Virus record (IMG/VR): IMGVR_UViG_3300020473_001965
Location: 1-64,000 of that record
Direction: 5' to 3' (one strand)
DNA length: 64,000 nucleotides
Positions 30,651 to 45,245 of the stretch are shown one piece after another. Below the pieces are notes generated by a model. It saw only the letters and a program-made list of their open reading frames with translations. It was not told where the DNA came from and ran no database searches. The translations under genes were made by a program, and so were the position numbers. How positions within the stretch are numbered: position 1 is the first letter of the stretch; every line of letters begins with the position of its first letter.

Positions 30651-30651
30651 T

Positions 30652-30765: not shown

Positions 30766-30805
30766 TTTGAGTACCTCTTGGTGAGAGTGACGTAAGGCGT
30801 TTCCT

Positions 30806-30846
30806 CCTTACATTCTTATAATACCACGCTCACCCGAGTCTTACAC
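30806..30846 (-). promoter_or_regulatory. Repeated early promoter
   Basis: GTGTAA-N17-TATTAT with TG extension, ends GTAAGG. Confidence 0.8.
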
Positions 30847-31020
30847 TAACTCAAGCCACTCCGCCTTGACACACCACTGGCGTCCGTCTTCCCACATAAC
30901 GAGAATGTTGTCGTCTCTCATAAACTTCGGGAGGATCTTGACAACCAATCCGGAATGCGCGCGGTCTGGTTTGTGGCTGTACTTTACTAGAGAGCCTTCT
31001 TCGATTCTGGCTTTACCCAT
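30841..31020 (-). CDS. MKVGDLV-family cassette, 59 aa (not in ORF track)
   Basis: MGKARIEEGSLVKY..GLVV..VMWEDG..WLELV. Confidence 0.7.
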   Translation of the reverse strand: MGKARIEEGSLVKYSHKPDRAHSGLVVKILPKFMRDDNILVMWEDGRQWCVKAEWLELV

Positions 31021-31220
31021 ACTCCCTCCTTCATCCAGTAGTCGACGTCGCTACGAGAGACACCTTCAATTGAAGTCTCCAACGTCGTCCCCGGGATACC
31101 TGACCACAAGACCTCTACCCAATCACACGCTTCAGCGAACTCTTCGTCCGAGTCATAGGGCGTGATGTCCAGGATCACACCCGTCTCATCACCGCACTGC
31201 ACCAAGTCACCGACTTTCAC
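30987..31220 (-). CDS. MKVGDLV-family cassette
   Basis: MKVGDLV..GVIL..VLW. Confidence 0.75.
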   Translation of the reverse strand: MKVGDLVQCGDETGVILDITPYDSDEEFAEACDWVEVLWSGIPGTTLETSIEGVSRSDVDYWMKEGVWVKPESKKAL

Positions 31221-31410
31221 TGACTACCTCCAAAAACATTTCTTTCACTCTTCGCGTTGTCCCTGTCTCAGGCCACATGACGTGTACGATGTTGTACATA
31301 GAGTGCAGCCCTTGATCCTCATGCTTGACGACGATGCCGTGACCAGGTGGGTAGGCATGGATCCGACTCGAGTAGTTAACTATCTTTACTAGATCACCGA
31401 CTTTCATCAA
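31207..31410 (-). CDS. MKVGDLV-family cassette
   Basis: MKVGDLV...LEVVSESR. Confidence 0.75.
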   Translation of the reverse strand: MMKVGDLVKIVNYSSRIHAYPPGHGIVVKHEDQGLHSMYNIVHVMWPETGTTRRVKEMFLEVVSESR

Positions 31411-31624
31411 TCACCTCGAGCTCCACCACCGGGATGTTCAATTTGCAGTCGTCGTACATCACAACTGCATGCAGCTCCGGGTCTACCTCTCGCCAGTCAA
31501 TCATTGGACCCAGCTCATCTGTCCGCCAGACTTTCTTCTGAATCGTGTCGACAACAATTCCCGTACGGGTCGCGACCTGTTTTTCATCGATCTTCTTTAG
31601 TCTTACCAAATCACCTGTCTTCAT
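31394..31624 (-). CDS. MKVGDLV-family cassette
   Basis: MKTGDLV...LEVIDESR. Confidence 0.75.
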   Translation of the reverse strand: MKTGDLVRLKKIDEKQVATRTGIVVDTIQKKVWRTDELGPMIDWREVDPELHAVVMYDDCKLNIPVVELEVIDESR

Positions 31625-31802
31625 GTACTCTCTCCACTCTTTCTCGCATAATCCAGTTGCACCTGCCATCAGCCCACAGTACGACTGGGTCACGCCTCCC
31701 CGGCCGTGGGTCTGATCCTTGATTGTCTGACCAATCGATAACAACCCCTGTCATCCGACTCTCCGAAAAGAGGTTCTTCACTAAGTCACCAATCTTCAGC
31801 AT
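31611..31802 (-). CDS. MKVGDLV-family cassette
   Basis: MLKIGDLV..VLWADG..HEDR. Confidence 0.75.
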   Translation of the reverse strand: MLKIGDLVKNLFSESRMTGVVIDWSDNQGSDPRPGRRDPVVLWADGRCNWIMRERVERVHEDR

Positions 31803-31972
31803 GCCAATCTCAACTCGTCTTCCCATACACCAATCATATGCCCATCGTCCCAAAGGATCACGCAGAAACAGTACTCACCGTTAACTGTGTGCTCGGTTTC
31901 GACAACAATGCCAACCGGAAGTCCTTCGACCCCCGGTTCGCGTTTCATCTGTACGAGATCTCCTACGTTCAC
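31796..31972 (-). CDS. MKVGDLV-family cassette, 58 aa (not in ORF track)
   Basis: GTG start NVGDLVQM..GIVV..ILWDDG. Confidence 0.7.
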   Translation of the reverse strand: MNVGDLVQMKREPGVEGLPVGIVVETEHTVNGEYCFCVILWDDGHMIGVWEDELRLAC

Positions 31973-31983
31973 TCAGCTCTCCG

Positions 31984-32103
31984 TCAGTGTCCTGGGCAGT
32001 GCATGCAAAGATCGAGCACTTCAGCCAAAACGATGATTGTTGGGAACATAGCGACGATCACCGTTCCAGTGATCTGATCTTGATATTTCTTGAGTGTTTC
32101 CAT
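31984..32103 (-). CDS. 39-aa membrane peptide ending CMHCPGH (not in ORF track)
   Basis: METLKKYQDQITGTVIVAMFPTIIVLAEVLDLCMHCPGH; AAGGA RBS. Confidence 0.65.
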   Translation of the reverse strand: METLKKYQDQITGTVIVAMFPTIIVLAEVLDLCMHCPGH

Positions 32104-32150
32104 TGTCTCTTCCTTGGTGAGGAGGTTACGTTAGTAAGGTTGTTTTCCTT

Positions 32151-32191
32151 CCTTACATTCTTATTATATCCCGCGCCGCGGCGTCTTACAC
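32151..32191 (-). promoter_or_regulatory. Repeated early promoter
   Basis: 41-bp family copy. Confidence 0.8.
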
Positions 32192-32195
32192 TGGA

Positions 32196-32390
32196 TTACT
32201 CAGATTCCTTTACCACCTCGAGCCAGTCAGCCGGCTCCCAGTCTACGACCAGAGAGTCACACCACATCACACCGACTCGCCGCATGTTCCCACTAATCTT
32301 CTGGCGATCGTCAACAATTAGTCCAACCGATGGCGGCTCACCGCATGGGATCGATTCACCCGGCATTATGACGAGATCACCGGCTTTCAC
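32196..32390 (-). CDS. MKVGDLV-family cassette
   Basis: MKAGDLV..GLIV..VMW..WLEVV. Confidence 0.75.
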   Translation of the reverse strand: MKAGDLVIMPGESIPCGEPPSVGLIVDDRQKISGNMRRVGVMWCDSLVVDWEPADWLEVVKESE

Positions 32391-32690
32391 TTACGCCTCC
32401 CCCGACGCAGAGGACGACCCAGTCTCGGGTTGCGCTTCTTTACGAAGTTCCGATCGTGGTACCAAGCAGCACCGCAAGCCAGCAACACCGAGAACATCAG
32501 CATCATGAACGCTGAGAACTGAAAAAAGAATGATACTTCAGGACAATACATTATGCTGCTACCCTCCGAAACTTGAGGCGCACGTTCTTCGCTCCGCGAC
32601 TGCGCCAGATGTTGAACTGCCTGAAAGCCTCATCGCAGCTGTACGTGCCACTGTAGTGGCCACCGATAAACAACTCGTACTTGACCCGCA

Positions 32691-32858
32691 CTACTTCACC
32701 TCAGTGAGCGCGCTGGGAATGTGACGAGACAAATGATTTGACATGTCCCACTTGACGAGAATGATCGGGGTCTCATTGCCCCACTTCTTAGTCTTCGCCA
32801 ACACCCGACCAATTTGGCCGGGATAGCTGACATGCGTTACGCGAGCTCCAACCTTCAT
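32691..32858 (-). CDS. MKVGDLV-family cassette
   Basis: MKVGARV..GRV..VKWD. Confidence 0.7.
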   Translation of the reverse strand: MKVGARVTHVSYPGQIGRVLAKTKKWGNETPIILVKWDMSNHLSRHIPSALTEVK

Positions 32859-32950
32859 GAGATCACCTGTGCGATCGCCATGCAAACGCCGAGCTCTGAG
32901 ACGACGCCGAGGTATCCGAGAAGAATGTAGTTTCCGATTTGTTCAGTCAT
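32855..32950 (-). CDS. 31-aa hydrophobic peptide (not in ORF track)
   Basis: MTEQIGNYILLGYLGVVSELGVCMAIAQVIS; AAGGA RBS. Confidence 0.55.
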   Translation of the reverse strand: MTEQIGNYILLGYLGVVSELGVCMAIAQVIS

Positions 32951-32990
32951 GTTATTTCCTTGGTGAGGAGTTGATTTGTGGTAGGACCAT

Positions 32991-33031
32991 CCCTACATTT
33001 ATATAATACCACAACTTACCAAGTCTTACAT
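32991..33031 (-). promoter_or_regulatory. Repeated early promoter
   Basis: 41-bp family copy. Confidence 0.75.
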
Positions 33032-33107
33032 GAAAAAGCGAGGGATGATTCGTCTACCAACGTCGGAAGGCAGCATCCTCCGAATCTCGGCTCTCCCTCG
33101 GGAACCA

Positions 33108-33395
33108 TTACTGTTTATTATCTTCCTGTTTTCCCATTGGCGTATACCAGCTGGGCTTATTTTGCTCCATAATGATTGAAGCCTCCTTCATTATCTGCAG
33201 AATCTTGTCCGCTTGCTCCTCTGCTGTGCCGTTCACAAAACCTTCCAGCTCCTGCGGATGCGCTTCGAAGTAAAGCCGTCCGACCGTCATCTTCTCAGCT
33301 TCGGTCATCGACTCAACATTCCAGTACTTGTCTATGGCACACTTCTTCTTCCATGCGTAGTAAGCAGTGCACCCTCCAATAATCAGCTCTATCAT
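33108..33395 (-). CDS. Hypothetical protein
   Basis: ATGA-coupled to the upstream gene. Confidence 0.55.
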   Translation of the reverse strand: MIELIIGGCTAYYAWKKKCAIDKYWNVESMTEAEKMTVGRLYFEAHPQELEGFVNGTAEEQADKILQIMKEASIIMEQNKPSWYTPMGKQEDNKQ

Positions 33396-34153
33396 CGCCG
33401 GGACTGCCTTTTGCGCAGTCGCTTCGAGCTCACCGTCTGAGGCAATCCGTTGCACAAGATATCTTGCACGACTTCTGAGTATTGCGCTGTCACGTACGGG
33501 TCACTCGTTACAATAGCAGCATCATTATTCCATACCGCCAAGTCACCCTCAGAAAAACGAGGCTCAGTCAGGGTCTTAACAGCACCCTTGAACATGTTCT
33601 TGAGGCGGGACAACGCGCGGTTATCGAGAGTCCCGTGTGTGTCGTAGAACGCTTGAGCTGAACGATACTGCCTATAGTGACCCTGACGATGCTGCCAGTA
33701 CCAGTCACCGCGCTTCGTCCCATAGATGAGAAGTGCCTCTACGAGTCGTCGCTCATCATCGGTGAGCACGGGCAGACCATTGTCAGCCAACTCTTTGGCT
33801 TGTTCCAAGAGGCTAGTTAGAAAAGCCTCTTGCTTCGGGGAAAGTCGCCAGCCCTTCGACAACTTGTACTTGAAGTCACCGAGTGGTCCGGCCATGGCCT
33901 CCATCCCGGGCGTCACCATTGCTCGCTCAATCTCCGCAGTACGGTCAGCGTTATGAACGACAGGAGCACCCTGCTCGATCAGGCTGTCCAAGTACTTACG
34001 CTGGCCGGCCGAAAGACCCTTGTTGCGCTCGAGACGCGCGATCATGTCAGTCACGAATCGAGCCGACTTGTCATGCTCCATCCCAGCGTCAACCCAAAGC
34101 ACTAGCGTCTCCTTGGCCTCGCGCAACCGAACTTCCCGAGATTTCCTAGCCAT
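33392..34153 (-). CDS. Hypothetical early protein with C-terminal KOW-like segment
   Basis: GGAGG RBS; FSEGDLAVW..AIV. Confidence 0.7.
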   Translation of the reverse strand: MARKSREVRLREAKETLVLWVDAGMEHDKSARFVTDMIARLERNKGLSAGQRKYLDSLIEQGAPVVHNADRTAEIERAMVTPGMEAMAGPLGDFKYKLSKGWRLSPKQEAFLTSLLEQAKELADNGLPVLTDDERRLVEALLIYGTKRGDWYWQHRQGHYRQYRSAQAFYDTHGTLDNRALSRLKNMFKGAVKTLTEPRFSEGDLAVWNNDAAIVTSDPYVTAQYSEVVQDILCNGLPQTVSSKRLRKRQSRR

Positions 34154-34286
34154 TATCGACCTCCATCGATGAGAATAAAAAGTGTCATGACAACCGGTAG
34201 CGGCCACCAAAGTTTCAGAAGTTTCAAAGCGACCTGTCCCATCAGGATCCAGGTACCAGCATCAGCAAGATTCTCCACAGCGTTCT

Positions 34287-34327
34287 CCTTACTTTCTAAT
34301 AATATCACGCTATGGCTTATCTTACAC
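34287..34327 (-). promoter_or_regulatory. Repeated early promoter
   Basis: 41-bp family copy. Confidence 0.8.
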
Positions 34328-34542
34328 TAAGCTGTCATCATTTCTTTGGGTACTTTAGCTTTTGTCTCAATCTCATTGAGGAGCCGACTGAGAGACGTCA
34401 CCTCGTCGACTTCTTGTTCAAACGTAGCACCGTCAGCTAGTCGCTGCCTGCATGCTTGGTAAGCTTTATTTAGTTTCGTCCAACGCTCGAGTTCTGCGAG
34501 CCCGAGGTTCGTGTATACATACGACGCAGCAGATCCCATCAT
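34327..34542 (-). CDS. Hypothetical protein
   Basis: GGAG RBS. Confidence 0.55.
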   Translation of the reverse strand: MMGSAASYVYTNLGLAELERWTKLNKAYQACRQRLADGATFEQEVDEVTSLSRLLNEIETKAKVPKEMMTA

Positions 34543-34552
34543 TATCTCCGTT

Positions 34553-34840
34553 CTAAACTAGTTTGATGAGTTTTATCGAATTGAGCGCCTGCTCCAGGTA
34601 GATCCTTTGTTGTTTGAGTTGTGCTACCTGTGTGTCAATAGTGGCACCTGACTCATGCAGGCAACCGAGTGGTGCCAAGTCTGCTTCTGTTCCTTTGCGC
34701 TCGAGTTGATCGACTACAAGTGAGATCCGCGAGCGAATGTTTGTGAGATTTGTCTTGAGCGTAATCGCAGTCTTTTCAAGTGCAGCTCTAGCTTCACCCA
34801 TCTCCTGCGCCATTACAGCCAGCTTGTCATAATCTTCCAT
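34553..34840 (-). CDS. Hypothetical coiled-coil protein
   Basis: Directly after a promoter-like GTGTAC..TACAAT. Confidence 0.6.
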   Translation of the reverse strand: MEDYDKLAVMAQEMGEARAALEKTAITLKTNLTNIRSRISLVVDQLERKGTEADLAPLGCLHESGATIDTQVAQLKQQRIYLEQALNSIKLIKLV

Positions 34841-34890
34841 GCTTTATTGTATCGTGAACACACTATAGTGTACACCTGAAAGCAAACTTT

Positions 34891-35091
34891 TTATTGAGTC
34901 GCCGACTCCGCCTCATCTTCTTCGTTCCACATGATGAAACAACCGATCGTAGTGATGGGAATCCAGAAAACTGCAGGACCCCATGACACCCAAGAGTGAG
35001 CATCGACTCCAAACAGTTGCACGAACCATGCCCAACCGCACGGTGGAATCCAACAGGCGGTGACCCATTCAACAAAACGAGGTGGCAACAT
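34891..35091 (-). CDS. Trp-rich membrane protein
   Basis: AAGGAG RBS; hydrophobic. Confidence 0.55.
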   Translation of the reverse strand: MLPPRFVEWVTACWIPPCGWAWFVQLFGVDAHSWVSWGPAVFWIPITTIGCFIMWNEEDEAESATQ

Positions 35092-35196
35092 TACTGATCT
35101 CCTTGATAAACAGTTTTATGCTTTTGCTTTCTTGTATACTTCTTAGGGCTGTGAGCACCCGCTCCGGTTCTGAAGTGCGCTTGCACAGCGACCCAG

Positions 35197-35526
35197 TTAC
35201 GGGGCTTCGGAGTCTTTGGTGATTTCTTCTTCTTCTTTGCCATTGCAAGAGTCCTTTCCTAACTGTTCTATTGTACCATAGTCAGGCTCGCAATACACTA
35301 AAAGATCAGATAAAAGTTGGAGCTCTTTCTGATACATGTGACACTGTTGTGCGCGACGCAAGATATCATTGTTAGAGCCGTAGTAACCGTCTTCTCCTCG
35401 CGATTCTATGCGTCTCTGCAGATCGTGAGCCGCGTCGAGCAGCCCTTTAAGTGATCGATCGACTGCATCTAGAACCCACCTCTTGCGCTCTAGAATGTAC
35501 TCAGATTCTTTCTTCTTCTCGCCCAT
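35197..35526 (-). CDS. Hypothetical protein
   Basis: ORF track. Confidence 0.6.
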   Translation of the reverse strand: MGEKKKESEYILERKRWVLDAVDRSLKGLLDAAHDLQRRIESRGEDGYYGSNNDILRRAQQCHMYQKELQLLSDLLVYCEPDYGTIEQLGKDSCNGKEEEEITKDSEAP

Positions 35527-35539
35527 GTATCAACTCATG

Positions 35540-35818
35540 TCACTCCGCAGGAGTCATCTGTGTAGCACGTAGGCGGTCCAGATGTACTCTCTGGAGTTCA
35601 CCGTTACTAAGCACGTCGTACATTTCGTCTTCGTACCATTTCATCGGTCGGCCTTCGCCCCAGTACGACTCGACGACTCTTTCAATGACAAGACCATCAA
35701 CCCACAGCCACTCGTCGAAGCCTTCTAGTTGAGTAGTAGCAACCCAGACTTGTTCGCCCAATTCGAATCGCCAGCGGTTGTTCGCCGTAAACTTCTCTTC
35801 TGCGTTTTTGTCTCTCAT
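35540..35818 (-). CDS. KOW/SH3-like hypothetical protein
   Basis: FELGEQVWV..GLVI..YDVL. Confidence 0.6.
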   Translation of the reverse strand: MRDKNAEEKFTANNRWRFELGEQVWVATTQLEGFDEWLWVDGLVIERVVESYWGEGRPMKWYEDEMYDVLSNGELQRVHLDRLRATQMTPAE

Positions 35819-35834
35819 TTTACTGCTTTCTTTT

Positions 35835-35921
35835 TGGTAGGACAGGCGGGACTCGAACCCGCATGCTCATTCGAGCGAGAGATTTTAAGTCTCTTGTGTC
35901 TACCGATTCCACCACTGTCCC
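35835..35921 (-). tRNA. tRNA-Leu(UAA)
   Basis: Cloverleaf with long variable arm, loop CTTAAAA, CCA. Confidence 0.95.
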
Positions 35922-35927
35922 GAGTTT

Positions 35928-36005
35928 TGGTAGGCTCACCGGGACTCGAACCCGGAACCCGCAGTTTATGAGACTGCTGCTCTAACCTGATTGAGCTATG
36001 AGCCT
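35928..36005 (-). tRNA. tRNA with CAU anticodon, probably Ile2 (alternatively elongator Met)
   Basis: Cloverleaf, loop CTCATAA, AGGCTCA acceptor resembles Ile tRNAs, CCA. Confidence 0.9.
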
Positions 36006-36014
36006 GTAAGATGT

Positions 36015-36130
36015 GAGACACCTGTTTGTTAGTCGATAATAGTTGTATGCGCGTTAATAACCGACTGCTAGGCTGTGCCTCCCTGCGCCCGGGCGAGCGT
36101 TTGTGTCCCTGACCTAATGTCTCCGCCGCC
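36015..36130 (-). ncRNA. Candidate small structured RNA between tRNA-Lys and tRNA(CAU)
   Basis: GAGACA..TGTCTC closing stem, AGTCGGT..ATCGACT; upstream promoter-like ATGAAC..TACGAT. Confidence 0.4.
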
Positions 36131-36177
36131 ACTCTTTATCGTACCGCGCTCCCCGTCAATGTTCATGCCAAAAGTAA

Positions 36178-36253
36178 TGGTGGGCCGTCCGAGACTCGAA
36201 CTCGGAACCTGCGGATTAAAAGTCCGATGCTCTGCCGGTTGAGCTAACGGCCC
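36178..36253 (-). tRNA. tRNA-Lys(UUU)
   Basis: Cloverleaf, loop CTTTTAA, CCA. Confidence 0.95.
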
Positions 36254-36257
36254 GTAC

Positions 36258-36692
36258 GATAGAGTTCCCAGCTTCTCTATCTAGACACAGCCTGTAAAGT
36301 CAGTACTTCGACTACGCTTACGCAACCACGAGATAGCTTACTGCTCGTAAGTCTTACCCACTATCTCTCTGGCCTGTGTCCCCCACTATAAGAAAGAGCT
36401 TTGGTGAGTTGGCACGTATCCCAGTACCCGTTCGCTCACCCTTGTGTTTCGGAAGTGCTCTACCCTCCCGATCTTCGCCGCCCCTCCCTTGTGCACAGGG
36501 AATGGCATTGAAAATGTAAAGTGAAGAGGAGGTAGGAATCCGTTTAGTTCGGCCGAGACATGCGGTTGGTGCATCATGCCTCTCGGTGCCGCGGACCTCT
36601 TGTGACCACCAATACGTCACTCACCGTCAGCTTCTTTGTTCGACGACTGCCGATTCCTACCAGTTCCTCGGACCGCTAAATCCAAGGCCTCT
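36258..36692 (-). ncRNA. Candidate structured ncRNA(s) in the tRNA operon leader
   Basis: Long-range GGTAGGAATC/GATTCCTACC, CCGAGA/TCTCGG, GGTGAG/CTCACC, GACACAG/CTGTGTC and GAGATAG/CTATCTC helices; no credible ORF. Confidence 0.6.
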
Positions 36693-36696
36693 AAAT

Positions 36697-36731
36697 TGTC
36701 AAAGAGCGGAGAGGACCTAATCTTTCGATTC
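36697..36731 (-). promoter_or_regulatory. boxB-like GAAA hairpin plus boxA (CGCTCTTTGACA) antitermination site
   Basis: Resembles rrn leader arrangement; lies between promoter and RNA genes. Confidence 0.6.
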
Positions 36732-36767
36732 CAGACGGCTGAACCATCAGCGCGAGCAGTGTCCTTT

Positions 36768-36808
36768 CCTTACTTTCTTATTCTACCACGTTTGGGGGGT
36801 TTTTACAT
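36768..36808 (-). promoter_or_regulatory. Repeated early promoter
   Basis: ATGTAA-N17-TAGAAT, 41-bp family. Confidence 0.8.
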
Positions 36809-36813
36809 CAAAA

Positions 36814-36890
36814 TGGCACGCCCGATAGGATTCGAACCTATGACCCTCGGCTTAGAAGGCCGATGCTCTATCCAGCTGAGCTACGGGCGC
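36814..36890 (-). tRNA. tRNA-Arg(UCU)
   Basis: Cloverleaf, loop TTTCTAA-type with anticodon TCT, CCA. Confidence 0.95.
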
Positions 36891-36895
36891 TTAGT

Positions 36896-37114
36896 TCATG
36901 TCGTAAATTCGTCTTCGATCCAGTCGTCGTCGTCTTCGTCATCGGCAACGTCTTCGTCCCAAACCATCGGCTCTTCGTCAGCTGACTCGCCCAATCCGTT
37001 CTGTCTGTTCTTCTCATCAATGACACCAGTCAACAAAATGATCTGGCCTTCGTCGTCGTAGACTATATCCCAGTGAAGCTCGCGAGCCATTTCTTCAATA
37101 TCGCTGATCGTCAT
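36896..37114 (-). CDS. Acidic hypothetical protein
   Basis: ATGA coupling; D/E-rich tail. Confidence 0.6.
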   Translation of the reverse strand: MTISDIEEMARELHWDIVYDDEGQIILLTGVIDEKNRQNGLGESADEEPMVWDEDVADDEDDDDWIEDEFTT

Positions 37115-37326
37115 TCTGTCACCGACATCGGAGTATCTGTCTTCTTCACAGTCTTTATCAAGCCCTCAAGCAACCCAGCAACCTCACCTCTCTGAGCACG
37201 AAGCGTATAACTCCTCCCAAACCGAATGATAATGTCCTGAGTAGCCTTGCACTCCTCGACTGAGACTCTTTCTGTACCCGCGTCAGTAGCCACTGACATT
37301 TGCTTAAGCAGCTTGTTGTATGTCAT
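37111..37326 (-). CDS. Hypothetical protein
   Basis: GGAGG RBS after promoter 37335-37373. Confidence 0.6.
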   Translation of the reverse strand: MTYNKLLKQMSVATDAGTERVSVEECKATQDIIIRFGRSYTLRAQRGEVAGLLEGLIKTVKKTDTPMSVTE

Positions 37327-37334
37327 TTCCTGCC

Positions 37335-37373
37335 TCCACCTCTATTCTACCGTGCGTTTCTTCCGTTTTACAC
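37335..37373 (-). promoter_or_regulatory. Repeated early promoter (variant)
   Basis: GTGTAA-N17-TAGAAT. Confidence 0.65.
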
Positions 37374-37533
37374 GACATAAAACTTTTTTTGCTTTAACAG
37401 CGCACATCTTAACTTGCAGCTGCAAAGCTCCGAGGACCACAGCGCCTGCAACGATAGCCGTCATATAGAACGGTACCGTCCGCTGCTCCTTCCCTGTTTC
37501 TCTTCTTTCCCATGGTTCTGACATAGATTCATT

Positions 37534-37583
37534 GCCCCGAAAGGGCCGCCCGGCTCACCAAGGAAGAGGTGACCCACCGGGCG
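37534..37583 (-). other. 3'-UTR double hairpin whose loop and arm are antisense to the shared early-gene leader
   Basis: CGCCCGG..TCACC-TCTTCCTT-GGTGA..CCGGGCG; 37554-37568 is the exact reverse complement of 32107-32121. Confidence 0.7.
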
Positions 37584-37595
37584 ACAAGAGCGTCA

Positions 37596-38345
37596 TTAGC
37601 CGACGCTCACTCGGGCCACCTCCTGAAAACCTGTTGCGCGCAAGTTGAGGTAGAAGATGTGACCGGCACCGCCGAAGCGATTCTTCTCGGTCGTCAGAAC
37701 ACGACACCCGAAGAGGTCCTGGTCCTTGCGCTCCACGTCCAGCGCGAGCTTTGCATCTACCATGTGCTTGAGCTTGTTGCTACCAGCCATCTGGCCGCCC
37801 TTCGTCACCTGACCGATGATGATGGCATTGACCATGTGGGCCTTGCAGTAGTCTGTAATCATCTGAAGAGCGCGCTCAGCAGTCGCGGTCGTGATTCGAC
37901 CGGTGTTGAACTTACCGTCCTCCATGCACTGCAGCGAGTCCACGATCAGGACGAAGTCCTTACCCGGGTTTGCAGCACGAACCGCGTCGCAGTTCGCCAG
38001 TAGCTGGGGAACGTTTGTCTCCTGCCCTGCCACGAAACCGCTCCGCAGCTTCAGCCGCTCTGCAGTCATCCGTACTTGGTACAACGACTCCTCAGCTGTG
38101 TTGAACATTGCAACAGCTCCCTTGCGGGTCAAGCTGTTAGCCAGCGTGAGCATCATAGTCGTCTTACCCGAACCAGGGGTACCGGTGAAAAGATAGACAG
38201 CCGAAGGAGTAAGTCCCTCGCCGCCAAGAGCGTCGTCAAAGAATTTGACACCGGTTGGGATTCTCCGCCGCAGTGCGTCGGGCACCTCGATCTCGAGGAT
38301 GTTGGTTCCAACTTTGATTCCATTGTCGCGTACGTTGAGCTTCAT
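37596..38345 (-). CDS. RadA/Sms-like RecA-fold ATPase (core only)
   Basis: GTPGSGKTT, IVDSLQ, KHMVDA, KNRFG signature; no Zn-finger or Lon domain. Confidence 0.85.
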   Translation of the reverse strand: MKLNVRDNGIKVGTNILEIEVPDALRRRIPTGVKFFDDALGGEGLTPSAVYLFTGTPGSGKTTMMLTLANSLTRKGAVAMFNTAEESLYQVRMTAERLKLRSGFVAGQETNVPQLLANCDAVRAANPGKDFVLIVDSLQCMEDGKFNTGRITTATAERALQMITDYCKAHMVNAIIIGQVTKGGQMAGSNKLKHMVDAKLALDVERKDQDLFGCRVLTTEKNRFGGAGHIFYLNLRATGFQEVARVSVG

Positions 38346-38388
38346 TTTTGATTTCCTTGGTGAGGAGTTGTTAAGCGTAAGTGTTATT

Positions 38389-38429
38389 CCTTACTATCTA
38401 ATAATACCATGTGCAGCCGGGCTTTACAC
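38389..38429 (-). promoter_or_regulatory. Repeated early promoter
   Basis: 41-bp family copy. Confidence 0.8.
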
Positions 38430-38695
38430 TAATTATGCGCGTACCCTGAAGTAAGACTATAAACTGCTGCTGTTCGCTGCAACTTTTCGATGGCTTCAGC
38501 CTTGTCGACTTCTGCTGTGATCTTGACTTCCTGAGGGAGCTCTTCGAAGAGAGTGTTCCCATCGAGCTCTACAGTTGCGCGCTCGACCAGCTCCTGGACA
38601 GAGCTCGTGATCACAAGATTTGCGGCAAACAGCTCGGCTCGTACCTTCGACTGCTCAAAAGGAGTAAGCTTTTCGATCTCTGTAATCTCGCTCAT
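38429..38695 (-). CDS. Hypothetical protein
   Basis: Start at MSEITE. Confidence 0.55.
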   Translation of the reverse strand: MSEITEIEKLTPFEQSKVRAELFAANLVITSSVQELVERATVELDGNTLFEELPQEVKITAEVDKAEAIEKLQRTAAVYSLTSGYAHN

Positions 38696-38973
38696 CCGAA
38701 CACCGCGTTGAAAGCACCAATAAAGATCCATGAGTAGATAACCCACAGCAAACTGATGACAAGCATAAAGCCGCCAATGTAAGCACATGCCATCATCATG
38801 GCAGTGTCGATTCCCCAGTTAACCCAATCTTTCATTGTTTCTCTCCATCTCCGATCAAAAGGTTGGCAAAGAGCTTGAAGCCCTCACCACAAAAGTAAAT
38901 GAATATCCAAGAGGCGAAAGTCAGCGCCCACATAATAAGAAATACCTTGAAAACGAACTCCATTGCCGCCTCT

Positions 38974-39014
38974 CCTTACTTTCTTATTCTACCACAACTA
39001 CGGGTGCGTTACAC
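38974..39014 (-). promoter_or_regulatory. Repeated early promoter
   Basis: 41-bp family copy. Confidence 0.8.
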
Positions 39015-39324
39015 GAAGTTTCGCATCATCAAACTCAAGGACACGCCCTGCTTTCTCTTCGAAGTCACTTAGCTTGCTAATGCGTCTACTGAGAACATCA
39101 CAAAGCTGGATGCAATCGACTTCCCACTCACCCTCTTCCCCTGCGTCGTCCAGAGGTACCGCTACCTCCATTGTCCGTGCTTGCCCAGCGATAGCTCCCT
39201 CTCGGAAACGATCGAGTACTTCAAGTACAAGACCTGTCGTCTTCACGTCACCGCGATCTAGGAACGTAATAGTATCGCCCGCTTCAATGAACGGGCTCCT
39301 ACCAAAGTCTGGTTTGATCAGCAT
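38998..39324 (-). CDS. KOW/SH3-like hypothetical protein
   Basis: IEAGDTITF..GLVLEV. Confidence 0.6.
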   Translation of the reverse strand: MLIKPDFGRSPFIEAGDTITFLDRGDVKTTGLVLEVLDRFREGAIAGQARTMEVAVPLDDAGEEGEWEVDCIQLCDVLSRRISKLSDFEEKAGRVLEFDDAKLRVTHP

Positions 39325-39331
39325 GTCACCC

Positions 39332-39697
39332 CTACCAGTTGATTGGGTCGTTGCTAGGGCGACCCCAAACGTCTACTTTCTGCGTCTCCGAACGATTGGC
39401 TTTTTTCTGTGCCTCACGTGCTTCGACACCTGCATCGAACATGTCCTTCTCGCTTTGGGTGTCCAGCGCACCTTCAATGAAGAAACTGAAGGTGTCGTCC
39501 TTCGACCAGTCATTGTCGAACGCAAGACCGTAGCCGATAAGCTGGACAGTTTCAGGACAGCACTCCGCGGGTGCGTCAAACTCCTGCACTGAGTAGTTCA
39601 GGTCGCCATCAAAGCCTTCCTGCTCTACATAATCCATCAGGTCTTCGATTCCCTCGAAGTCGTCCATGCTACCAATGATAAAAGTATAGGTCTTCAT
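39332..39697 (-). CDS. Acidic hypothetical protein
   Basis: GGAGG RBS. Confidence 0.65.
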   Translation of the reverse strand: MKTYTFIIGSMDDFEGIEDLMDYVEQEGFDGDLNYSVQEFDAPAECCPETVQLIGYGLAFDNDWSKDDTFSFFIEGALDTQSEKDMFDAGVEAREAQKKANRSETQKVDVWGRPSNDPINW

Positions 39698-39698
39698 T

Positions 39699-39878
39699 CT
39701 ATTTGCCCTCCGCTTGCAAGCGCTTCTTGTATCCCTGTGCCTCGCTCCGGCTCAGACCGCTTACCACCGGCCGAATGAACGGGTCACAGATTGGGCTACG
39801 CATCCCCTTGACGTCTGAAGAGCGAAACACCGCCCAGCTGTAAGAGTCATCTCCCATAAACTTCTTGATTGTGTACAT
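39699..39878 (-). CDS. 59-aa hypothetical protein (not in ORF track)
   Basis: MYTIKKFMGDDSYSWAVF...; AAGGAGG RBS after promoter. Confidence 0.65.
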   Translation of the reverse strand: MYTIKKFMGDDSYSWAVFRSSDVKGMRSPICDPFIRPVVSGLSRSEAQGYKKRLQAEGK

Positions 39879-39890
39879 TGTGTACCTCCT

Positions 39891-39931
39891 TGGTTCTATC
39901 TAATAATACCACGCTGCGATGCGTTTTACAC
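39891..39931 (-). promoter_or_regulatory. Repeated early promoter
   Basis: 41-bp family copy. Confidence 0.75.
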
Positions 39932-40341
39932 TAAAGCACGGGCGTGTGATTGGGGTCGTCGGTCACCAGGTCTACAGCTGCCTTGTATCGGGCGTGGTCA
40001 TATCCTTGTGTGTCGATAAGCAGCCTATCTCCCATCTGATGGTCCGGACCGTCGAAGCACTTTACGATAAACTTCGTGGGGTCACCCGCCATCTTACGAG
40101 CGTGAAAGAGCATCGCGAGGTCTTCGAACTCAGGCAGCCAAAAGACCAGCTCGCGGAACTCTGAGTACGGCACAAGCAGCTCCACAGGGACCAGCTCCAC
40201 CTCCTTACCCGGCAGTCCGCATCTCCGCAGAACCTCCGTGATTGTCGGGTACTGCTCTTCATCTGCTTCGACACACAGACACATGTTCTCATCAAACATC
40301 GTGTGCTTCTTCCGATATCCCGCGTGTTCTACTACAAACAT
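39931..40341 (-). CDS. Hypothetical protein
   Basis: TAATG coupling; DTQGYDHARY motif. Confidence 0.6.
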   Translation of the reverse strand: MFVVEHAGYRKKHTMFDENMCLCVEADEEQYPTITEVLRRCGLPGKEVELVPVELLVPYSEFRELVFWLPEFEDLAMLFHARKMAGDPTKFIVKCFDGPDHQMGDRLLIDTQGYDHARYKAAVDLVTDDPNHTPVL

Positions 40342-40739
40342 TATTCTTCCTCGTCTTCCCATGGCATTCTAAGGTCTACGCCAGGCATAGAGATCACTTG
40401 ATTGCCTACTTGAATGGTAACTCGTTCTCCACCGCCGAGTGTCTCCAGGACAATCCCAAAGCTCCCAGTGGTCACTCCGCGGGCATTCCATGGTACCCGC
40501 TTGATCTCGACTAAGTCCCCTTCTTGATAAGGGAACGTCCGAACTTTTCGAGGCCCCTGCATGCGTGCGTATGCCTTCGCGCTCCGCCGCTGCGATCGCC
40601 GCTCTTTAGCTGCCGCCGGGTCGTAGCCCTCAGTCATCTCGAGCTTCCGCTCGGTGACCTCAATCTCACCCTCAGCCTCTAGAGCTTTTTTCTGTGCCTT
40701 GATGGTTCTGAGTAGATTGCGAGGAATCTTGGGTGCCAC
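40341..40739 (-). CDS. Basic protein with C-terminal KOW-like domain
   Basis: YQEGDLVEIK..GIVLE. Confidence 0.65.
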   Translation of the reverse strand: MAPKIPRNLLRTIKAQKKALEAEGEIEVTERKLEMTEGYDPAAAKERRSQRRSAKAYARMQGPRKVRTFPYQEGDLVEIKRVPWNARGVTTGSFGIVLETLGGGERVTIQVGNQVISMPGVDLRMPWEDEEE

Positions 40740-40748
40740 TGGGTACCT

Positions 40749-40789
40749 CCTTACTTTCTTATTCTACCATGCTCCCACGTATCTTACAC
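40749..40789 (-). promoter_or_regulatory. Repeated early promoter
   Basis: 41-bp family copy. Confidence 0.8.
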
Positions 40790-41365
40790 GGAACCCGTGT
40801 GTATCATTGAGCGAACGGCAGTCCAGAACTCGATCTCATTAGTATGGTGACTCAGCTGCCTTCTCGAGTCATTCACTGATGTCCTCGATCGTTCGTCTAG
40901 CTTCTGAAGACAGGGCTCGAGCATTTCGTTGCCCGGCCCATAGACAAGCTTTACCCTGACATCCCCCGGCCGGGTGAGACGATGAAGATTGGTCAGCCAC
41001 TGAAAGAGGTAGTACGACACAGTCCTCGCTTCTTCTATGTTTGCAGCCGGAATGTAACCAGCAGGGGTATACCCAATAGTCACCTCATAGACTCCGCTTC
41101 CGCCCTCTTCTGACCGCTGGGTCACTAGAGGTTCTAGGGTGGACCATATCCTCTTTGCAGCTGTCCTCAACTCCTCGCGATCATCATCCGGCAAAGACCA
41201 TTGACTCAGTAGTCCAGACCCTTCAGGCCGGTGCTGCCAGACTTCTGTAAACAGCCCAGTCTCCACGTCATAGGCGTTTCTCAAATTGCTATCCCAAGCT
41301 TCGTCGACTGTAGGGGCGTATGTGATGTCCTCAAGCATTGTCTTGAGCAAGGACACTAGACCCAC
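40784..41365 (-). CDS. Hypothetical protein, paralogue of 44186-44923
   Basis: GVYEVTIGY..YIPAANIEEA. Confidence 0.65.
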   Translation of the reverse strand: MGLVSLLKTMLEDITYAPTVDEAWDSNLRNAYDVETGLFTEVWQHRPEGSGLLSQWSLPDDDREELRTAAKRIWSTLEPLVTQRSEEGGSGVYEVTIGYTPAGYIPAANIEEARTVSYYLFQWLTNLHRLTRPGDVRVKLVYGPGNEMLEPCLQKLDERSRTSVNDSRRQLSHHTNEIEFWTAVRSMIHTGSV

Positions 41366-41562
41366 CTGTCTAGTCGAGTAGAGTGCTCGAGCTTAGTTTC
41401 CTCTTCCTCTTCAACCTCAACCGGTGTTGGCTCCAGGTATGGGTCTAGACTATCGCCCCTGATCCACATCCCAAACTGAGCACCCCACGTCGGATGAAGG
41501 CTGATAGCAATGAGGAAGCCCCAGACTCCGAATCCGATGATAGTGAATAGCGCTTCAACCAT
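41356..41562 (-). CDS. Small membrane protein
   Basis: N-terminal TM; TAATG coupling. Confidence 0.6.
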   Translation of the reverse strand: MVEALFTIIGFGVWGFLIAISLHPTWGAQFGMWIRGDSLDPYLEPTPVEVEEEEETKLEHSTRLDRWV

Positions 41563-42905
41563 TACGCCGCCTCCTTGCTTGCATTGCCCTTCAGCTCCAC
41601 GACTGTGTCACCGCGGTGTGCGTCGAAGTACAGCTTGCGTCCCGGGACGATCACCCATGCCCGACGCATGCGGGAGGGACCAGGGTCGGCAGCCTCCCCG
41701 TCGGTGCAGACGATGTAGCCATCGAAGCGGTGACGGTTCTCTTCAGCGTGCCGAGCAACTGCCCTGAAGCACGTGCCGCCGCAGCGGAAGCGGTTGAGCT
41801 TCGAGCGCGAGCCCTTCTTCCAGACGATCTCATTGTCGGTGTCAACCGTGCTGTCGAATGGGTAGAAGGTGAACGTTACCTTGCGTGCCAGCTGCTCCAG
41901 CTCTGCGTAGAGCAGTGCCAGCGACTCATCATCAACCGAGCCACTCTGATCGACGTAGACTGCCACGTTGGCGCTGTGACCAATCTTGCGGCCGCTGTGG
42001 ATGTAGGGGTACTTGCGGTTGAGACGCTTCATGGTGCGGCTCTTGTTAGCGCGCTGACTCATGCCAACGAAGTTACGAAGGACTGCGCGCCAGTCAACCT
42101 CATTCGAGCACATCCGACGGAGCTCGCTCCGCATCTCAGCGGGCACCGAGCCCCACTGGCCCTTGCTGTCACACTTCTTGACTGCGTTCTTGAGGGCTTG
42201 CTTGACCTTGCCCTTGACGAGCTCCTTCTCAGCGTCGGTAGCACCCTCGCCCCACTCACCGTGGTCGTCCATGGTACCGGGAACGCCGTCTCCCTCTCCG
42301 GGCTGGCCGCCTTGGCCGTCGCCACCAGTGAGATCGTCCTTCATCTGCTCGTCATCCATCAGCTGGCCGAAGTACCACTCCGCGCTCATGTTCGGCGGGA
42401 AGCTTTCAATCTTTGCCGAGATGCGATCGAAGCGTGCCTTGGCCTGCTCATCGAGCTTGGCGTACGCATCCGGATCGATGTGGATGGCCTGGCCAGGAAT
42501 GAGACCACCCTTGGGAAGCTCCTCCACTGGGATGATCGAGTTGATCGCGAGGTCGGTCGCGTAGTTGTGAACGATGTGCGGGGTCTTCTTGCGGCTAGTC
42601 GTGTGCTCGAAGACCAGGTGGTACACCTCGTGCTTGAGAAGTCCCTTTACTTCTTTGTTGCTCAGCGAGGCGAGGAAGCGGCGGTTCCACCACATCTTGA
42701 TATCACCGTCCTTGGCGAGCACGCCGGCGGTCGGGATCGAGTCCGTCTCCACCTTGGTGACGTCACGAAGCATGGCCGAGAAAAAGGGCTCATCCCACAT
42801 CAACGCTGTGAGGTGGTTGCCAAGGTCGAAAGCAGCGAGCTCCGCGTCGGTCAGCTCTGCGCCTGGTGCCACTGGGATGTCGGTCGAGGTAGTGTTGTCA
42901 GCCAT
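41562..42905 (-). CDS. DUF2201-type metallopeptidase-VWA protein
   Basis: HEVYH, NYATDLAIN, DQSGS MIDAS, GGT, TDG. Confidence 0.88.
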   Translation of the reverse strand: MADNTTSTDIPVAPGAELTDAELAAFDLGNHLTALMWDEPFFSAMLRDVTKVETDSIPTAGVLAKDGDIKMWWNRRFLASLSNKEVKGLLKHEVYHLVFEHTTSRKKTPHIVHNYATDLAINSIIPVEELPKGGLIPGQAIHIDPDAYAKLDEQAKARFDRISAKIESFPPNMSAEWYFGQLMDDEQMKDDLTGGDGQGGQPGEGDGVPGTMDDHGEWGEGATDAEKELVKGKVKQALKNAVKKCDSKGQWGSVPAEMRSELRRMCSNEVDWRAVLRNFVGMSQRANKSRTMKRLNRKYPYIHSGRKIGHSANVAVYVDQSGSVDDESLALLYAELEQLARKVTFTFYPFDSTVDTDNEIVWKKGSRSKLNRFRCGGTCFRAVARHAEENRHRFDGYIVCTDGEAADPGPSRMRRAWVIVPGRKLYFDAHRGDTVVELKGNASKEAA

Positions 42906-45242: not shown

Positions 45243-45245
45243 TCT

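What the first reader, a model, noticed from the sequence alone, without database searches (positions are those of the whole stretch)
35835..36890. Codon-usage relay: early GC-rich genes deliver tRNAs for the A-ending codons of the AT-rich genome
Seen: the tRNAs read UUA, AAA, AGA, probably AUA (Ile2) and ACA, codons that are rare in GC-rich hosts. Four of the five sit under early promoters inside the GC-rich island, whose first genes (41.5-45.7 kb) favour G/C third positions, while the left arm is A/T-rich. Inference: the earliest genes match the host tRNA pool, and the phage tRNAs then license the AT-rich genes, acting as a translational timer.
Basis: partly seen in the sequence, partly recalled or inferred. 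Interest (0 to 1): 0.63.

Follow-up and report, generated by a model that had tools for sequence, protein, structure and literature searches.

The report
Early tRNA operon of marine jumbo phage
An uncultured marine jumbo phage carries an early-transcribed cluster of tRNA genes, plus its own tRNA-modifying enzyme, for the A-ending codons that fill most of its genome. Its GC-rich early genes and its most abundant proteins avoid those codons, which is a clear example of a known strategy rather than a new one.

Summary
Window 35835-36890 (- strand) encodes tRNA-Arg(UCU), Lys(UUU), a CAU tRNA and Leu(UAA). tRNA-Thr(UGU) lies at 17.9 kb. Three more tRNAs (Gly-UCC, Ser-UGA, Asn-GUU) lie outside the window in this 236-kb far-T4-like phage.

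The cluster sits in a 20-kb array of about 16 near-identical sigma-70-like promoters that coincides with a GC-rich island. Five genes at 41.5-45.7 kb have GC3 of 0.76-0.80, against 0.35 ± 0.05 for the bulk genome. They almost lack the served codons (19 vs 175 per 1000). The served codons are the ones most over-used in the bulk relative to the island (p = 2e-6).

The CAU tRNA is very probably tRNA-Ile2. It is not an initiator, it resembles Ile2-type tRNAs, and the phage encodes a minimal TilS that lies next to CAU tRNAs in relatives.

- The host is unknown.
- The late capsid gene and the SSB gene also avoid UUA, AGA, AUA and AAA.
- Intergenic DNA and first codon positions in the island are GC-rich too.
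- No timing data exist.

The best reading is early-expressed codon compensation, a known kind of system. The island recurs in relatives with only 56% protein identity. A conserved structured RNA lies inside the operon.

The parts
35835..35921 (-). tRNA-Leu(UAA), reads UUA (and UUG); 3' CCA encoded
   Evidence: ARAGORN; Rfam tRNA 58.5 bits; sequence
35928..36005 (-). CAU-anticodon elongator tRNA, most likely tRNA-Ile2 (lysidine at position 34, reads AUA)
   Evidence: A1:U72 is paired and the anticodon stem lacks three G:C pairs, so it is not an initiator. Identity is 0.67-0.74 to Ile2-type CAT tRNAs, 0.51 to a Met-elongator type and 0.55 to an initiator. The phage encodes a TilS N domain. That gene lies within 0.06-2.2 kb of a CAT tRNA in 4 of the 6 related records that carry it.
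36178..36253 (-). tRNA-Lys(UUU), reads AAA (and AAG)
36258..36332 (-). 75-nt non-coding block just upstream of tRNA-Lys; 92% identical in relative G001; function unknown
36518..36695 (-). Conserved structured non-coding RNA of about 178 nt inside the tRNA operon; no Rfam family
   Evidence: 83% DNA identity to G001, whose MoxR protein is only 56% identical. RNAalifold gives 50 pairs, 14 of them with compensatory changes among 3 sequences. No Rfam match at E <= 1.
36770..36812 (-). Promoter P36808 of the early family; drives the ncRNA, then tRNA-Lys, tRNA-Ile2 and tRNA-Leu
   Evidence: PWM score 43.1. The same 'tRNA-Arg then promoter' arrangement occurs in G003 and G001.
36814..36890 (-). tRNA-Arg(UCU), reads AGA (and AGG); starts 5 nt after the stop codon of ORF 36896-37114
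38391..38433 (-). Promoter P38429; heads the unit KaiC/RecA-like ATPase (37596-38345), three small ORFs, then tRNA-Arg
   Evidence: PWM score 49.9; Pfam KaiC-type ATPase
29405..45783 (-). Array of about 16 copies of one promoter cassette, TTTaGTGTAAGA-N12(GC-rich)-TGgTATTATtAGAtAGTAAGGA. It has a non-canonical -35 element, an extended -10 and a Shine-Dalgarno site, and it coincides with the GC-rich island of small ORFs.
   Evidence: gene calls
41562..45698 (-). GC3-rich core (GC3 0.76-0.80): DUF2201/VWA protein 41562-42905, MoxR-type AAA ATPase 43017-44045, and unknowns 44186-44923, 45003-45242 and 45246-45698. The four larger genes each have their own strong promoter (P42955, P44123, P44986, P45779); 45003-45242 shares P45779.
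17896..17971 (-). tRNA-Thr(UGU), reads ACA; lies in the AT-rich arm with no early-family promoter nearby

Best explanation
The locus is an early-transcribed decoding-supply operon of an uncultured marine far-T4-like jumbo myovirus.

Two promoters of one phage-specific sigma-70-like family transcribe it. P38429 gives a mixed mRNA/tRNA unit that ends in tRNA-Arg(UCU). P36808 gives a conserved structured RNA followed by tRNA-Lys(UUU), tRNA-Ile2(CAU) and tRNA-Leu(UAA).

Other parts of the genome add tRNA-Thr(UGU), Gly(UCC), Ser(UGA) and Asn(GUU), and a 200-aa TilS catalytic domain that presumably converts C34 of the CAU tRNA to lysidine. Together these raise the cell's capacity to read UUA, AGA, AUA, AAA, ACA, UCA and GGA. 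Those codons make up 17.5% of all codons in the bulk genome.

Genes that must be translated well whatever the phage supplies are purged of UUA, AGA, AUA and AAA. These are the genes behind the early promoters, the SSB gene and the major capsid gene. I infer that these four codons are poorly served by the host.

Shown: the genes, promoter motifs, codon statistics, the TilS domain and the conservation in relatives.
Inferred: early timing, lysidine formation, host tRNA scarcity, and the benefit to translation.

The GC richness of the early array is partly a regional property of the DNA and is not fully explained by codon choice.
For: - tRNAs and anticodons.
- Promoter family and its positions.
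- Served codons number 175 per 1000 in the bulk, 68 in the early array and 19 in the core.
- Served codons are the most differential between bulk and island.
- Genes behind early-type promoters outside the island also avoid the four codons although their GC3 is bulk-like: 6 of 6 fall below the 25th percentile.
- SSB and MCP avoid them.
- The TilS N domain scores 116.5 bits against TIGR02432 (cut-off 93.6), has an SGGVDS PP-loop and aligns to A. aeolicus TilS residues 25-229.
- TilS-N lies next to CAT tRNAs in relatives.
- The CAT tRNA resembles Ile2-type tRNAs.
- The island, the promoter family and the 'tRNA-Arg then promoter' arrangement are kept in G003 (81%) and G001 (56% MoxR identity).
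- Precedents: the AT-rich jumbo phage PA5oct (33% GC) on a 66% GC host has 12 tRNAs (PMC7318152), and its record carries a homologous short TilS. MIJ3 TilS is described in PMC6892783.
Against: - The host is unknown, so scarcity of the matching host tRNAs is inferred only from codon avoidance within the phage.
- The one bacterial bin that holds a related contig is about 41% GC and has tRNAs with the Leu(UAA), Arg(UCU), Lys(UUU), Thr(UGU) and Ser(UGA) anticodons and three CAT tRNAs. That contig is probably mis-binned phage DNA.
- MCP keeps ACA, UCA and GGA at bulk levels, so three of the seven served codons show no sign of being slow.
- All A-ending codons are depleted in the core, not only the served ones.
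- Intergenic GC and GC1 are raised in the island.
- No RNA evidence exists for expression or timing.
- The TilS homologue lacks the C-terminal tRNA-binding domains, so its specificity is unproven.
Confidence: 0.6

Rival explanations
1. Strict relay or timer. Early genes are built for the host tRNA pool. The AT-rich bulk cannot be translated efficiently until the phage tRNAs accumulate, so tRNA supply itself sets the temporal programme.
For: The same codon statistics as above. The tRNAs lie behind early-type promoters. A candidate distinct motif, aATAATTAa, lies 13-71 nt upstream of structural genes and the PrkA operon, which suggests separate promoter classes.
Against: - If separate promoter classes exist, transcription could set timing without tRNA gating.
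- The capsid gene, the late gene that needs most translation, avoids UUA, AGA, AUA and AAA. So late translation does not lean on those tRNAs where it matters most.
- The SSB gene does the same.
- Small ORFs at 50-64 kb with no strong early-family promoter have intermediate, not bulk-like, usage.
- No kinetic data exist.
Confidence: 0.2
2. Replacement or anti-defence tRNAs. The phage tRNAs substitute for host tRNAs that are lost when the host genome or RNA is degraded, or that are cut by anticodon nucleases (Lys-UUU, Arg and Leu species are typical targets). Early expression serves that purpose.
For: Early-type promoters. The set includes tRNA-Lys(UUU) and Arg(UCU). The phage also carries a tmRNA and its own TilS, which points to some independence from host translation maintenance. 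The literature considers this hypothesis for other phages (PMC12482277).
Against: Eight tRNAs cannot replace a whole pool. The set is tightly tied to the phage's own over-used A-ending codons, which replacement alone does not predict. I did not look for anticodon-nuclease countermeasures or for loop mutations relative to a host, and the latter cannot be assessed without the host.
Confidence: 0.15
3. The GC-rich island is primarily a DNA-level feature, and codon depletion is largely its by-product. Possible causes are region-specific mutation or repair bias, or selection on base composition of the first-expressed DNA (for example escape from AT-targeting silencers or nucleases).
For: - Intergenic GC is 0.47-0.53 inside the island and 0.31-0.38 outside, although the AT-rich promoter cassettes sit in those spacers.
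- GC1 is raised by about 0.1.
- The promoter spacers are GC-rich.
- The core uses G-ending four-fold codons (TCG, GCG, CCG, GTG, CTG) that the translationally selected MCP shuns.
- All A-ending codons are depleted.
- The island is maintained in relatives past synonymous saturation.
Against: Core GC3 (0.77) far exceeds local intergenic GC (0.47-0.50), so codon-level selection acts on top of any regional effect. Early-promoter genes outside the island avoid the four codons without being GC-rich. Served codons are more depleted than other A-ending codons.
Confidence: 0.25
4. The island is recently acquired foreign DNA from a GC-richer donor, and the tRNA cluster sits in it by accident.
For: A sharp GC3 step at the core block (0.57 to 0.78). 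The MoxR/VWA pair is widespread in unrelated phages.
Against: MoxR has a graded series of homologues from 97% down to 53% identity in marine phage contigs. The island, its promoter family and the tRNA-Arg position are shared with relatives at 81% and 56% identity. The promoters inside the island recur elsewhere in the genome. No mobility genes were seen.
Confidence: 0.05

Closest known systems
Phage T4 tRNA gene cluster and its early/late codon-usage split (from memory: Cowe & Sharp 1991; Kunisawa 1992; T4 tRNA region with two stable RNAs of unknown function). General early-vs-late codon differences in phages: PMC5683454.
   Same: A T4-like myovirus lineage. tRNAs are clustered and transcribed from sigma-70-like promoters. 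They read codons such as AGA, AUA and UUA that the phage uses more than its best-expressed genes do. Small stable RNAs are co-encoded with the tRNAs.
   Different: Here the compositional split is extreme (GC3 0.78 vs 0.35) and is regional, including non-coding DNA. The phage brings its own TilS. The host is unknown. The ncRNA has no detected similarity to any described family.
Codon-compensation model of phage tRNAs (Bailly-Bechet et al. 2007, cited in PMC7318152; marine cyanomyophage case from memory: Limor-Waisberg 2011, Enav 2012; Sf14 analysis PMC12482277).
   Same: The tRNA set corresponds to codons over-used by the phage. The bulk genome is A/T-ending, and the most strongly selected genes avoid four of the served codons.
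   Different: The host side of the comparison could not be made here. The internal contrast (early array, SSB and MCP against the bulk) stands in for it.
Pseudomonas jumbo phages PA5oct/MIJ3: short phage TilS plus 12 tRNAs in a 33% GC genome on a 66% GC host (PMC6892783, PMC7318152).
   Same: A homologous short TilS (38% identity over 93% of the protein). Jumbo phages with A/T-rich coding sequence and their own tRNAs.
   Different: A different phage lineage. The pairing of TilS with a CAU tRNA, and their adjacency in relatives, was not described in the passages I read. No GC-rich early island was mentioned in the passages I read.
Bacterial TilS / tRNA-Ile2 system (structures 1wy5, 1ni5, 3a2k).
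   Same: N-terminal PP-loop catalytic domain with SGGxDS and further conserved motifs. A CAU tRNA with an Ile2-like body.
   Different: Only the catalytic domain is present (200 aa, against 317-464 aa). The C-terminal domains that read the tRNA acceptor stem in the long forms (from memory) are absent.

Membership tests
tRNA-Ile2(CAU, lysidine) with TilS | Elongator-type tRNA with a CAU anticodon that is not an initiator | tested here: met
   A1:U72 is paired and the anticodon stem is GCAGU/ACUGC, without three G:C pairs
tRNA-Ile2(CAU, lysidine) with TilS | tRNA body closer to Ile2-type than to Met-elongator-type CAU tRNAs | tested here: met
   Identity is 0.74 to the Ile2-like tRNA of MAG G006, 0.67-0.70 to PGAP-named tRNA-Ile(CAT) of E. 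coli, 0.51 to the Met-elongator type and 0.55 to the initiator. The reference set is small, and no isotype covariance model was available.
tRNA-Ile2(CAU, lysidine) with TilS | A lysidine synthetase available to modify C34 | tested here: met
   TIGR02432 scores 116.5 bits against a cut-off of 93.6. The PP-loop reads SGGVDS. phmmer to 1wy5 gives E = 2.4e-17. The gene is next to CAT tRNAs in 4 of 6 related records.
tRNA-Ile2(CAU, lysidine) with TilS | Full-length TilS architecture with C-terminal tRNA-binding domain(s) | tested here: not met
   The protein is 200 aa and aligns only to residues 25-229 of the 317-aa A. aeolicus enzyme. Relatives have 202-222-aa ORFs.
tRNA-Ile2(CAU, lysidine) with TilS | Lysidine present at position 34, tRNA charged with Ile, and AUA decoded | not testable with these tools
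   Needs mass spectrometry of the tRNA and aminoacylation assays
Phage tRNA codon compensation | Phage tRNAs cognate to codons the phage uses heavily | tested here: met
   The seven served codons make up 175 per 1000 bulk codons. They rank 1, 2, 3, 4, 6, 7 and 20 of 59 for bulk-over-island use.
Phage tRNA codon compensation | Those codons are rare, or their tRNAs scarce, in the host | tested here: inconclusive
   The host was not identified. The only evidence is indirect: SSB, MCP and early-promoter genes avoid UUA, AGA, AUA and AAA.
Temporal (early/late) codon partition | Gene classes defined by measured time of expression | not testable with these tools
   The only evidence is promoter motifs. 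RNA contigs from the same sample matched only short tRNA-like stretches, at 90-99% identity, on very short contigs or with flanks unlike the phage.
Temporal (early/late) codon partition | Later genes richer in tRNA-served codons than early ones | tested here: met
   This holds for bulk and structural genes. The capsid gene is an exception for UUA, AGA, AUA and AAA.
Sigma-70 extended -10 promoter | TGnTAtaAT at -10 with 17-bp spacing to a -35 element | tested here: met
   TGgTATTAT lies 17 bp after GTGTAA in about 16 sites. The -35 hexamer is not TTGACA (3 of 6 match). Promoter activity was not tested.
Horizontally acquired genomic island | Absent from, or differently placed in, close relatives; a foreign gene set | tested here: not met
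   The island, with the same gene order and promoters, is present in G003 and G001. MoxR is a family-wide gene.

The most novel reading that the evidence does not exclude
The GC-rich early array is an adaptive, actively maintained 'landing zone' in one clade of marine jumbo phages. Both its DNA composition and its codon use would be kept host-like so that the first genes work before any phage factor exists. The operon inside it would then deliver what the AT-rich remainder needs: tRNAs, a phage-specific minimal TilS/tRNA-Ile2 pair that works without the usual tRNA-recognition domains, and a new structured RNA co-processed with the tRNAs.
Probability: 0.25. Interest if true: 0.7.

Novelty: new variant of a known kind. 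Interest (0 to 1): 0.5.

Why it matters
Phage tRNAs have been known for decades, and their purpose is still argued (PMC12482277). This genome offers an unusually clean natural contrast within one molecule. A promoter-defined gene class has GC3 of 0.55-0.80 and almost none of the served codons. The bulk has GC3 of 0.35 and 17.5% served codons. The contrast is kept in relatives whose synonymous sites should be saturated.

The genome also links a domain-minimal TilS genetically to CAU tRNAs in several marine jumbo phages. That raises a concrete biochemical question: how does a TilS without its tRNA-binding domains tell tRNA-Ile2 from tRNA-Met?

It also exposes a conserved structured RNA inside a phage tRNA operon.

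The limits are that the phage is uncultured and its host unknown. The central causal claim, that tRNA supply enables or times translation of the bulk genes, therefore cannot yet be tested directly.

Tried and rejected
- A generic sigma-70 consensus scan of 30-49 kb showed no enrichment. De novo motif work replaced it.
- Megablast of 33-40 kb against named phages hit only tRNA genes.
- BLAST of the CAU tRNA against phage and E. coli collections gave hits on tRNAs of various isotypes and weak E-values, not decisive alone.
- Host search, PrkA against species genomes: the best hit was a 23.8-kb contig in a MAG labelled Legionellales (77% aa). I take it for mis-binned phage DNA. The MAG is about 41% GC, and its own tmRNA (tag ANLENYEDAVAA) is unrelated to the phage tmRNA.
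- Host search, psbA: absent, so there is no cyanophage hallmark, although the record is only 87% complete.
- Host search, sequencing runs: only marine metagenomes hold the DNA, with no isolate or single-cell run.
- RNA evidence: metatranscriptome contigs of the same sample, laid on 35500-41400 (5,901 letters, within the operators' limit), matched only short tRNA-like stretches at 90-99% identity. These lay on very short contigs or had flanks unlike the phage, so they give no evidence that the phage locus is transcribed. This says nothing about silence.
- Rfam at E <= 1 found nothing in the spacers.
- A pattern scan of IMG/VR for more copies of the ncRNA returned 32 stretches. Only the two known relatives were real.
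- The T4 late promoter TATAAATA is not enriched (1 hit on the coding strand).
- Recent horizontal transfer of the island was rejected.
Full report
**What the window is.** The window is the first 64 kb of a 235,672-bp IMG/VR virus record with an estimated completeness of 87%. The same phage occurs on a 296,665-bp marine metagenome contig. About twenty marine metagenome runs from at least five studies also hold it. It encodes a T4-type major head protein, tail sheath, portal, family-B DNA polymerase and ribonucleotide reductase. The closest capsid matches are 35-46% identical and belong to uncultured huge phages and to Microcystis, Flavobacterium and Rhodothermus myoviruses. So it is a distant T4-like jumbo myovirus with no cultured close relative. 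Nearly all genes are on the minus strand, so transcription runs from high to low coordinates.

**Check of the observation.** ARAGORN and Rfam agree on four minus-strand tRNAs at 35835-36890: Leu(UAA), a CAU tRNA, Lys(UUU) and Arg(UCU). They also agree on tRNA-Thr(UGU) at 17896-17971 and a tmRNA at 5354-5720. The rest of the genome adds Gly(UCC), Ser(UGA) and Asn(GUU). Seven of the eight tRNAs therefore have an A-ending Watson-Crick cognate codon. All four clustered tRNAs encode their 3' CCA.

GC content is 0.35-0.42 in the left arm. It climbs to 0.48-0.53 at 25-40 kb, peaks at 0.58-0.60 at 42-45 kb and returns to about 0.42 by 55 kb. No other part of the genome exceeds 0.47 in 5-kb windows.

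I made my own gene calls and checked them against the database calls for 27.6-48.3 kb. Five genes at 41562-45698 have GC3 of 0.76-0.80, which is 8.8-9.6 SD above the bulk (0.353 ± 0.046). GC2 is flat.

**Promoters.** A generic sigma-70 scan was not enriched. K-mer enrichment in upstream regions followed by a position weight matrix found one cassette, TTTaGTGTAAGA-N12-TGgTATTATtAGAtAGTAAGGA. It has a -35-like GTGTAA, a 17-bp spacing, an extended -10 and then a Shine-Dalgarno site. There are about 16 strong copies, all on the minus strand, all between 29.4 and 45.8 kb. Six or seven weaker copies lie elsewhere.

- Each of the four larger core genes has its own strong copy.
- tRNA-Arg begins 5 nt after the stop codon of ORF 36896-37114, so it belongs to the unit headed by P38429.
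- P36808 lies 6 nt after tRNA-Arg and 517 nt before tRNA-Lys.
- A different motif, aATAATTAa, lies 13-71 nt upstream of 8 of its 11 minus-strand occurrences. These include structural genes and the PrkA operon, so it is a candidate late promoter.

'Early' rests on analogy with T4, where sigma-70-like promoters front arrays of small ORFs. It has not been measured.

**The CAU tRNA.** Three lines of evidence point to tRNA-Ile2.

1. It has a paired A1:U72 and no run of three G:C pairs in the anticodon stem, so it is not an initiator.
2. In a small panel it is 0.67-0.74 identical to Ile2-type CAU tRNAs. Two of these are E. coli tRNAs that PGAP names tRNA-Ile, and one is the Ile2-like member of a MAG's three CAU tRNAs. 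It is only 0.51 identical to the Met-elongator type and 0.55 to the initiator.
3. The phage encodes a 200-aa protein at genome 71192-71794 that passes NCBIfam's equivalog-domain model for the TilS N domain (116.5 bits, cut-off 93.6). It carries the SGGVDS PP-loop and aligns to residues 25-229 of A. aeolicus TilS. A weaker copy of the early promoter precedes it.

Six of 30 related viral records, most of them fragments, have the same short TilS. In four of the six a CAU tRNA lies 0.06-2.2 kb away. The closest named homologues are the short TilS proteins of Pseudomonas jumbo phages PA5oct and MIJ3 (38% identity; PMC6892783). PA5oct is a 33% GC phage on a 66% GC host and has 12 tRNAs (PMC7318152). 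Lysidine itself is not shown.

**Does the tRNA set fit the codon contrast?** Yes.

- The seven served codons make up 175 per 1000 codons in the bulk genome, 68 in the early array and 19 in the core.
- I ranked all 59 synonymous codons by over-use in the bulk relative to the array. The served codons take ranks 1, 2, 3, 4, 6, 7 and 20. Mann-Whitney p is 1.7e-6 against all codons and 0.0087 against the other seven A-ending codons.
- The first genes behind the six early-type promoters outside the island have bulk-like GC3 (0.24-0.44). All six still fall below the 25th percentile for the share of UUA, AGA, AUA and AAA among Leu, Arg, Ile and Lys codons.

The last result ties avoidance of these codons to the promoter class independently of local GC. 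The sample is only six genes.

**What does not fit a simple relay.**

1. The two proteins expected to be most abundant avoid UUA, AGA, AUA and AAA as strongly as the core does. These are the gp32-like SSB (171297-172076) and the major capsid protein (201396-203279). The four codons make up 0.02 and 0.06 of their Leu, Arg, Ile and Lys codons, against a bulk median of 0.38. The capsid is a late product. So these codons remain disfavoured when the phage tRNAs should be present.
2. MCP and SSB reach this with T- and C-ending codons (CTT, CGT, GGT, GCT, GTT) and shun G-ending four-fold codons. The core uses C- and G-ending ones (CTC/CTG, CGC, TCG, GCG, CCG). The core therefore carries a real GC shift on top of codon selection.
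3. Intergenic DNA inside the island is 0.47-0.53 GC, against 0.31-0.38 outside, and GC1 is raised by about 0.1. tRNA matching does not predict this.
4. MCP keeps ACA, UCA and GGA at bulk levels.
5. Every core gene has its own promoter, so the 'first genes' are first in position only.
6. The host is unknown.

**Relatives.** The MoxR ATPase of the core has hundreds of marine homologues, graded from 97% down to 53% identity. I fetched forty related viral loci.

- Record G003 (81% MoxR identity) has the same GC island, 18 copies of the same promoter family and a promoter directly after tRNA-Arg.
- Record G001 (56% identity) has an island of GC3 0.56-0.82 flanked by 0.30-0.44, promoters of the same type, tRNA-Arg followed by a promoter, and a tmRNA 86% identical to ours.
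- Other relatives with about 42-46% GC show a smaller bump or none.
- AT-rich and GC-rich relatives have a MoxR GC3 of 0.16-0.21 and 0.85-0.95 respectively.

At 56% protein identity synonymous sites should be saturated. The island is therefore actively maintained in this clade, and it is neither a recent import nor a decaying relic.

The 560-nt gap between P36808 and tRNA-Lys is not empty. A 178-nt block at 36518-36695 is 83% identical in G001 and about 74% in G003, which is more conserved than the proteins. It folds into a consensus of 50 base pairs, 14 of which show compensatory double changes among only three sequences. A second block at 36258-36332 is 92% identical in G001. Neither matches any Rfam family at E ≤ 1. 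From memory, T4 encodes two stable RNAs of unknown function in its tRNA cluster, and the arrangement here is analogous.

**Verdict.** The locus is an early-promoter-driven decoding-supply operon holding tRNAs and an unknown structured RNA. A phage TilS elsewhere in the genome complements it. The most likely function is classical codon compensation for an A/T-ending bulk genome. Genes that must be translated efficiently are selected not to depend on it.

This is a known kind of system (T4; the compensation model; PA5oct; Sf14, PMC12482277; early/late codon differences, PMC5683454). The variants here are the conserved GC-rich early array, the genetic linkage of a minimal TilS with CAU tRNAs, and the embedded ncRNA. 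The 'translational timer' is possible but not supported beyond what compensation already explains. The cause of the regional GC excess remains open.

Noticed in passing
window 36518-36695 (-) and 36258-36332 (-): Two non-coding blocks between promoter P36808 and tRNA-Lys are more conserved than the proteins in relatives. The first block is 83% identical in G001 and about 74% in G003; the second is 92% identical in G001. The 178-nt block has a consensus fold of 50 pairs, 14 with compensatory changes in 3 sequences. There is no Rfam match. It is probably a new phage small RNA processed together with the tRNAs.
   Followed up: partly
G000 71192-71794 (-) = L012:7192-7794: A 200-aa stand-alone TilS catalytic domain (TIGR02432, 116.5 bits) behind a weak early-type promoter. 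Homologous short TilS genes lie next to CAU tRNAs in related marine phage records and occur in the PA5oct/MIJ3 jumbo phages.
   Followed up: yes
window 5354-5720 (-): Phage-encoded tmRNA with tag ANNNYHYEQRLAA. It is 86% identical to the tmRNA of relative G001 (tag ANNNYHFESVRLAA), so it is conserved in the phage lineage. It is unlike the tmRNA of the MAG that holds a related contig.
   Followed up: partly
window 9400-13855 (-): A PrkA kinase, SpoVR and DUF444 (YeaH-like) trio of stress or sporulation-associated host-type genes sits in the AT-rich arm. The motif TATAATTAA lies 43 nt upstream of PrkA.
   Followed up: partly
G000 201396-203279 (-) and 171297-172076 (-): The major capsid and gp32-like SSB genes show strong translational codon bias. 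They prefer C-ending two-fold, G-ending Lys/Glu/Gln and T-ending four-fold codons. This gives an internal read-out of the unknown host's preferred codons.
   Followed up: partly
minus-strand sites such as G000 223084, 205819, 204933, 189281, 173668, 11374: The motif aATAATTAa lies 13-71 nt upstream of start codons in 8 of 11 occurrences, mostly at structural genes. It is a candidate late promoter, distinct from T4's TATAAATA.
   Followed up: partly
L021-L060 (MoxR loci of related viral contigs): In many loci of this phage family (overall GC 27-63%) the MoxR/VWA block forms a local GC bump, and in 24 of 40 loci tRNA genes lie within 10 kb of it. The amplitude of the GC3 excess varies widely among lineages of similar overall GC.
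   Followed up: partly
L082 (PBNF01000027.1, MAG labelled Legionellales bacterium SP195): A 23.8-kb contig of this public MAG encodes a PrkA 77% identical to the phage's. It is probably a jumbo-phage contig binned into a bacterial genome.
   Followed up: partly
window 47016-47756 (-) and 37596-38345 (-): Within the island there is a methyltransferase-like gene and a KaiC/RecA-like ATPase. The ATPase has GC3 of 0.70 and its own strong early promoter. The functions of both are unknown.
   Followed up: no
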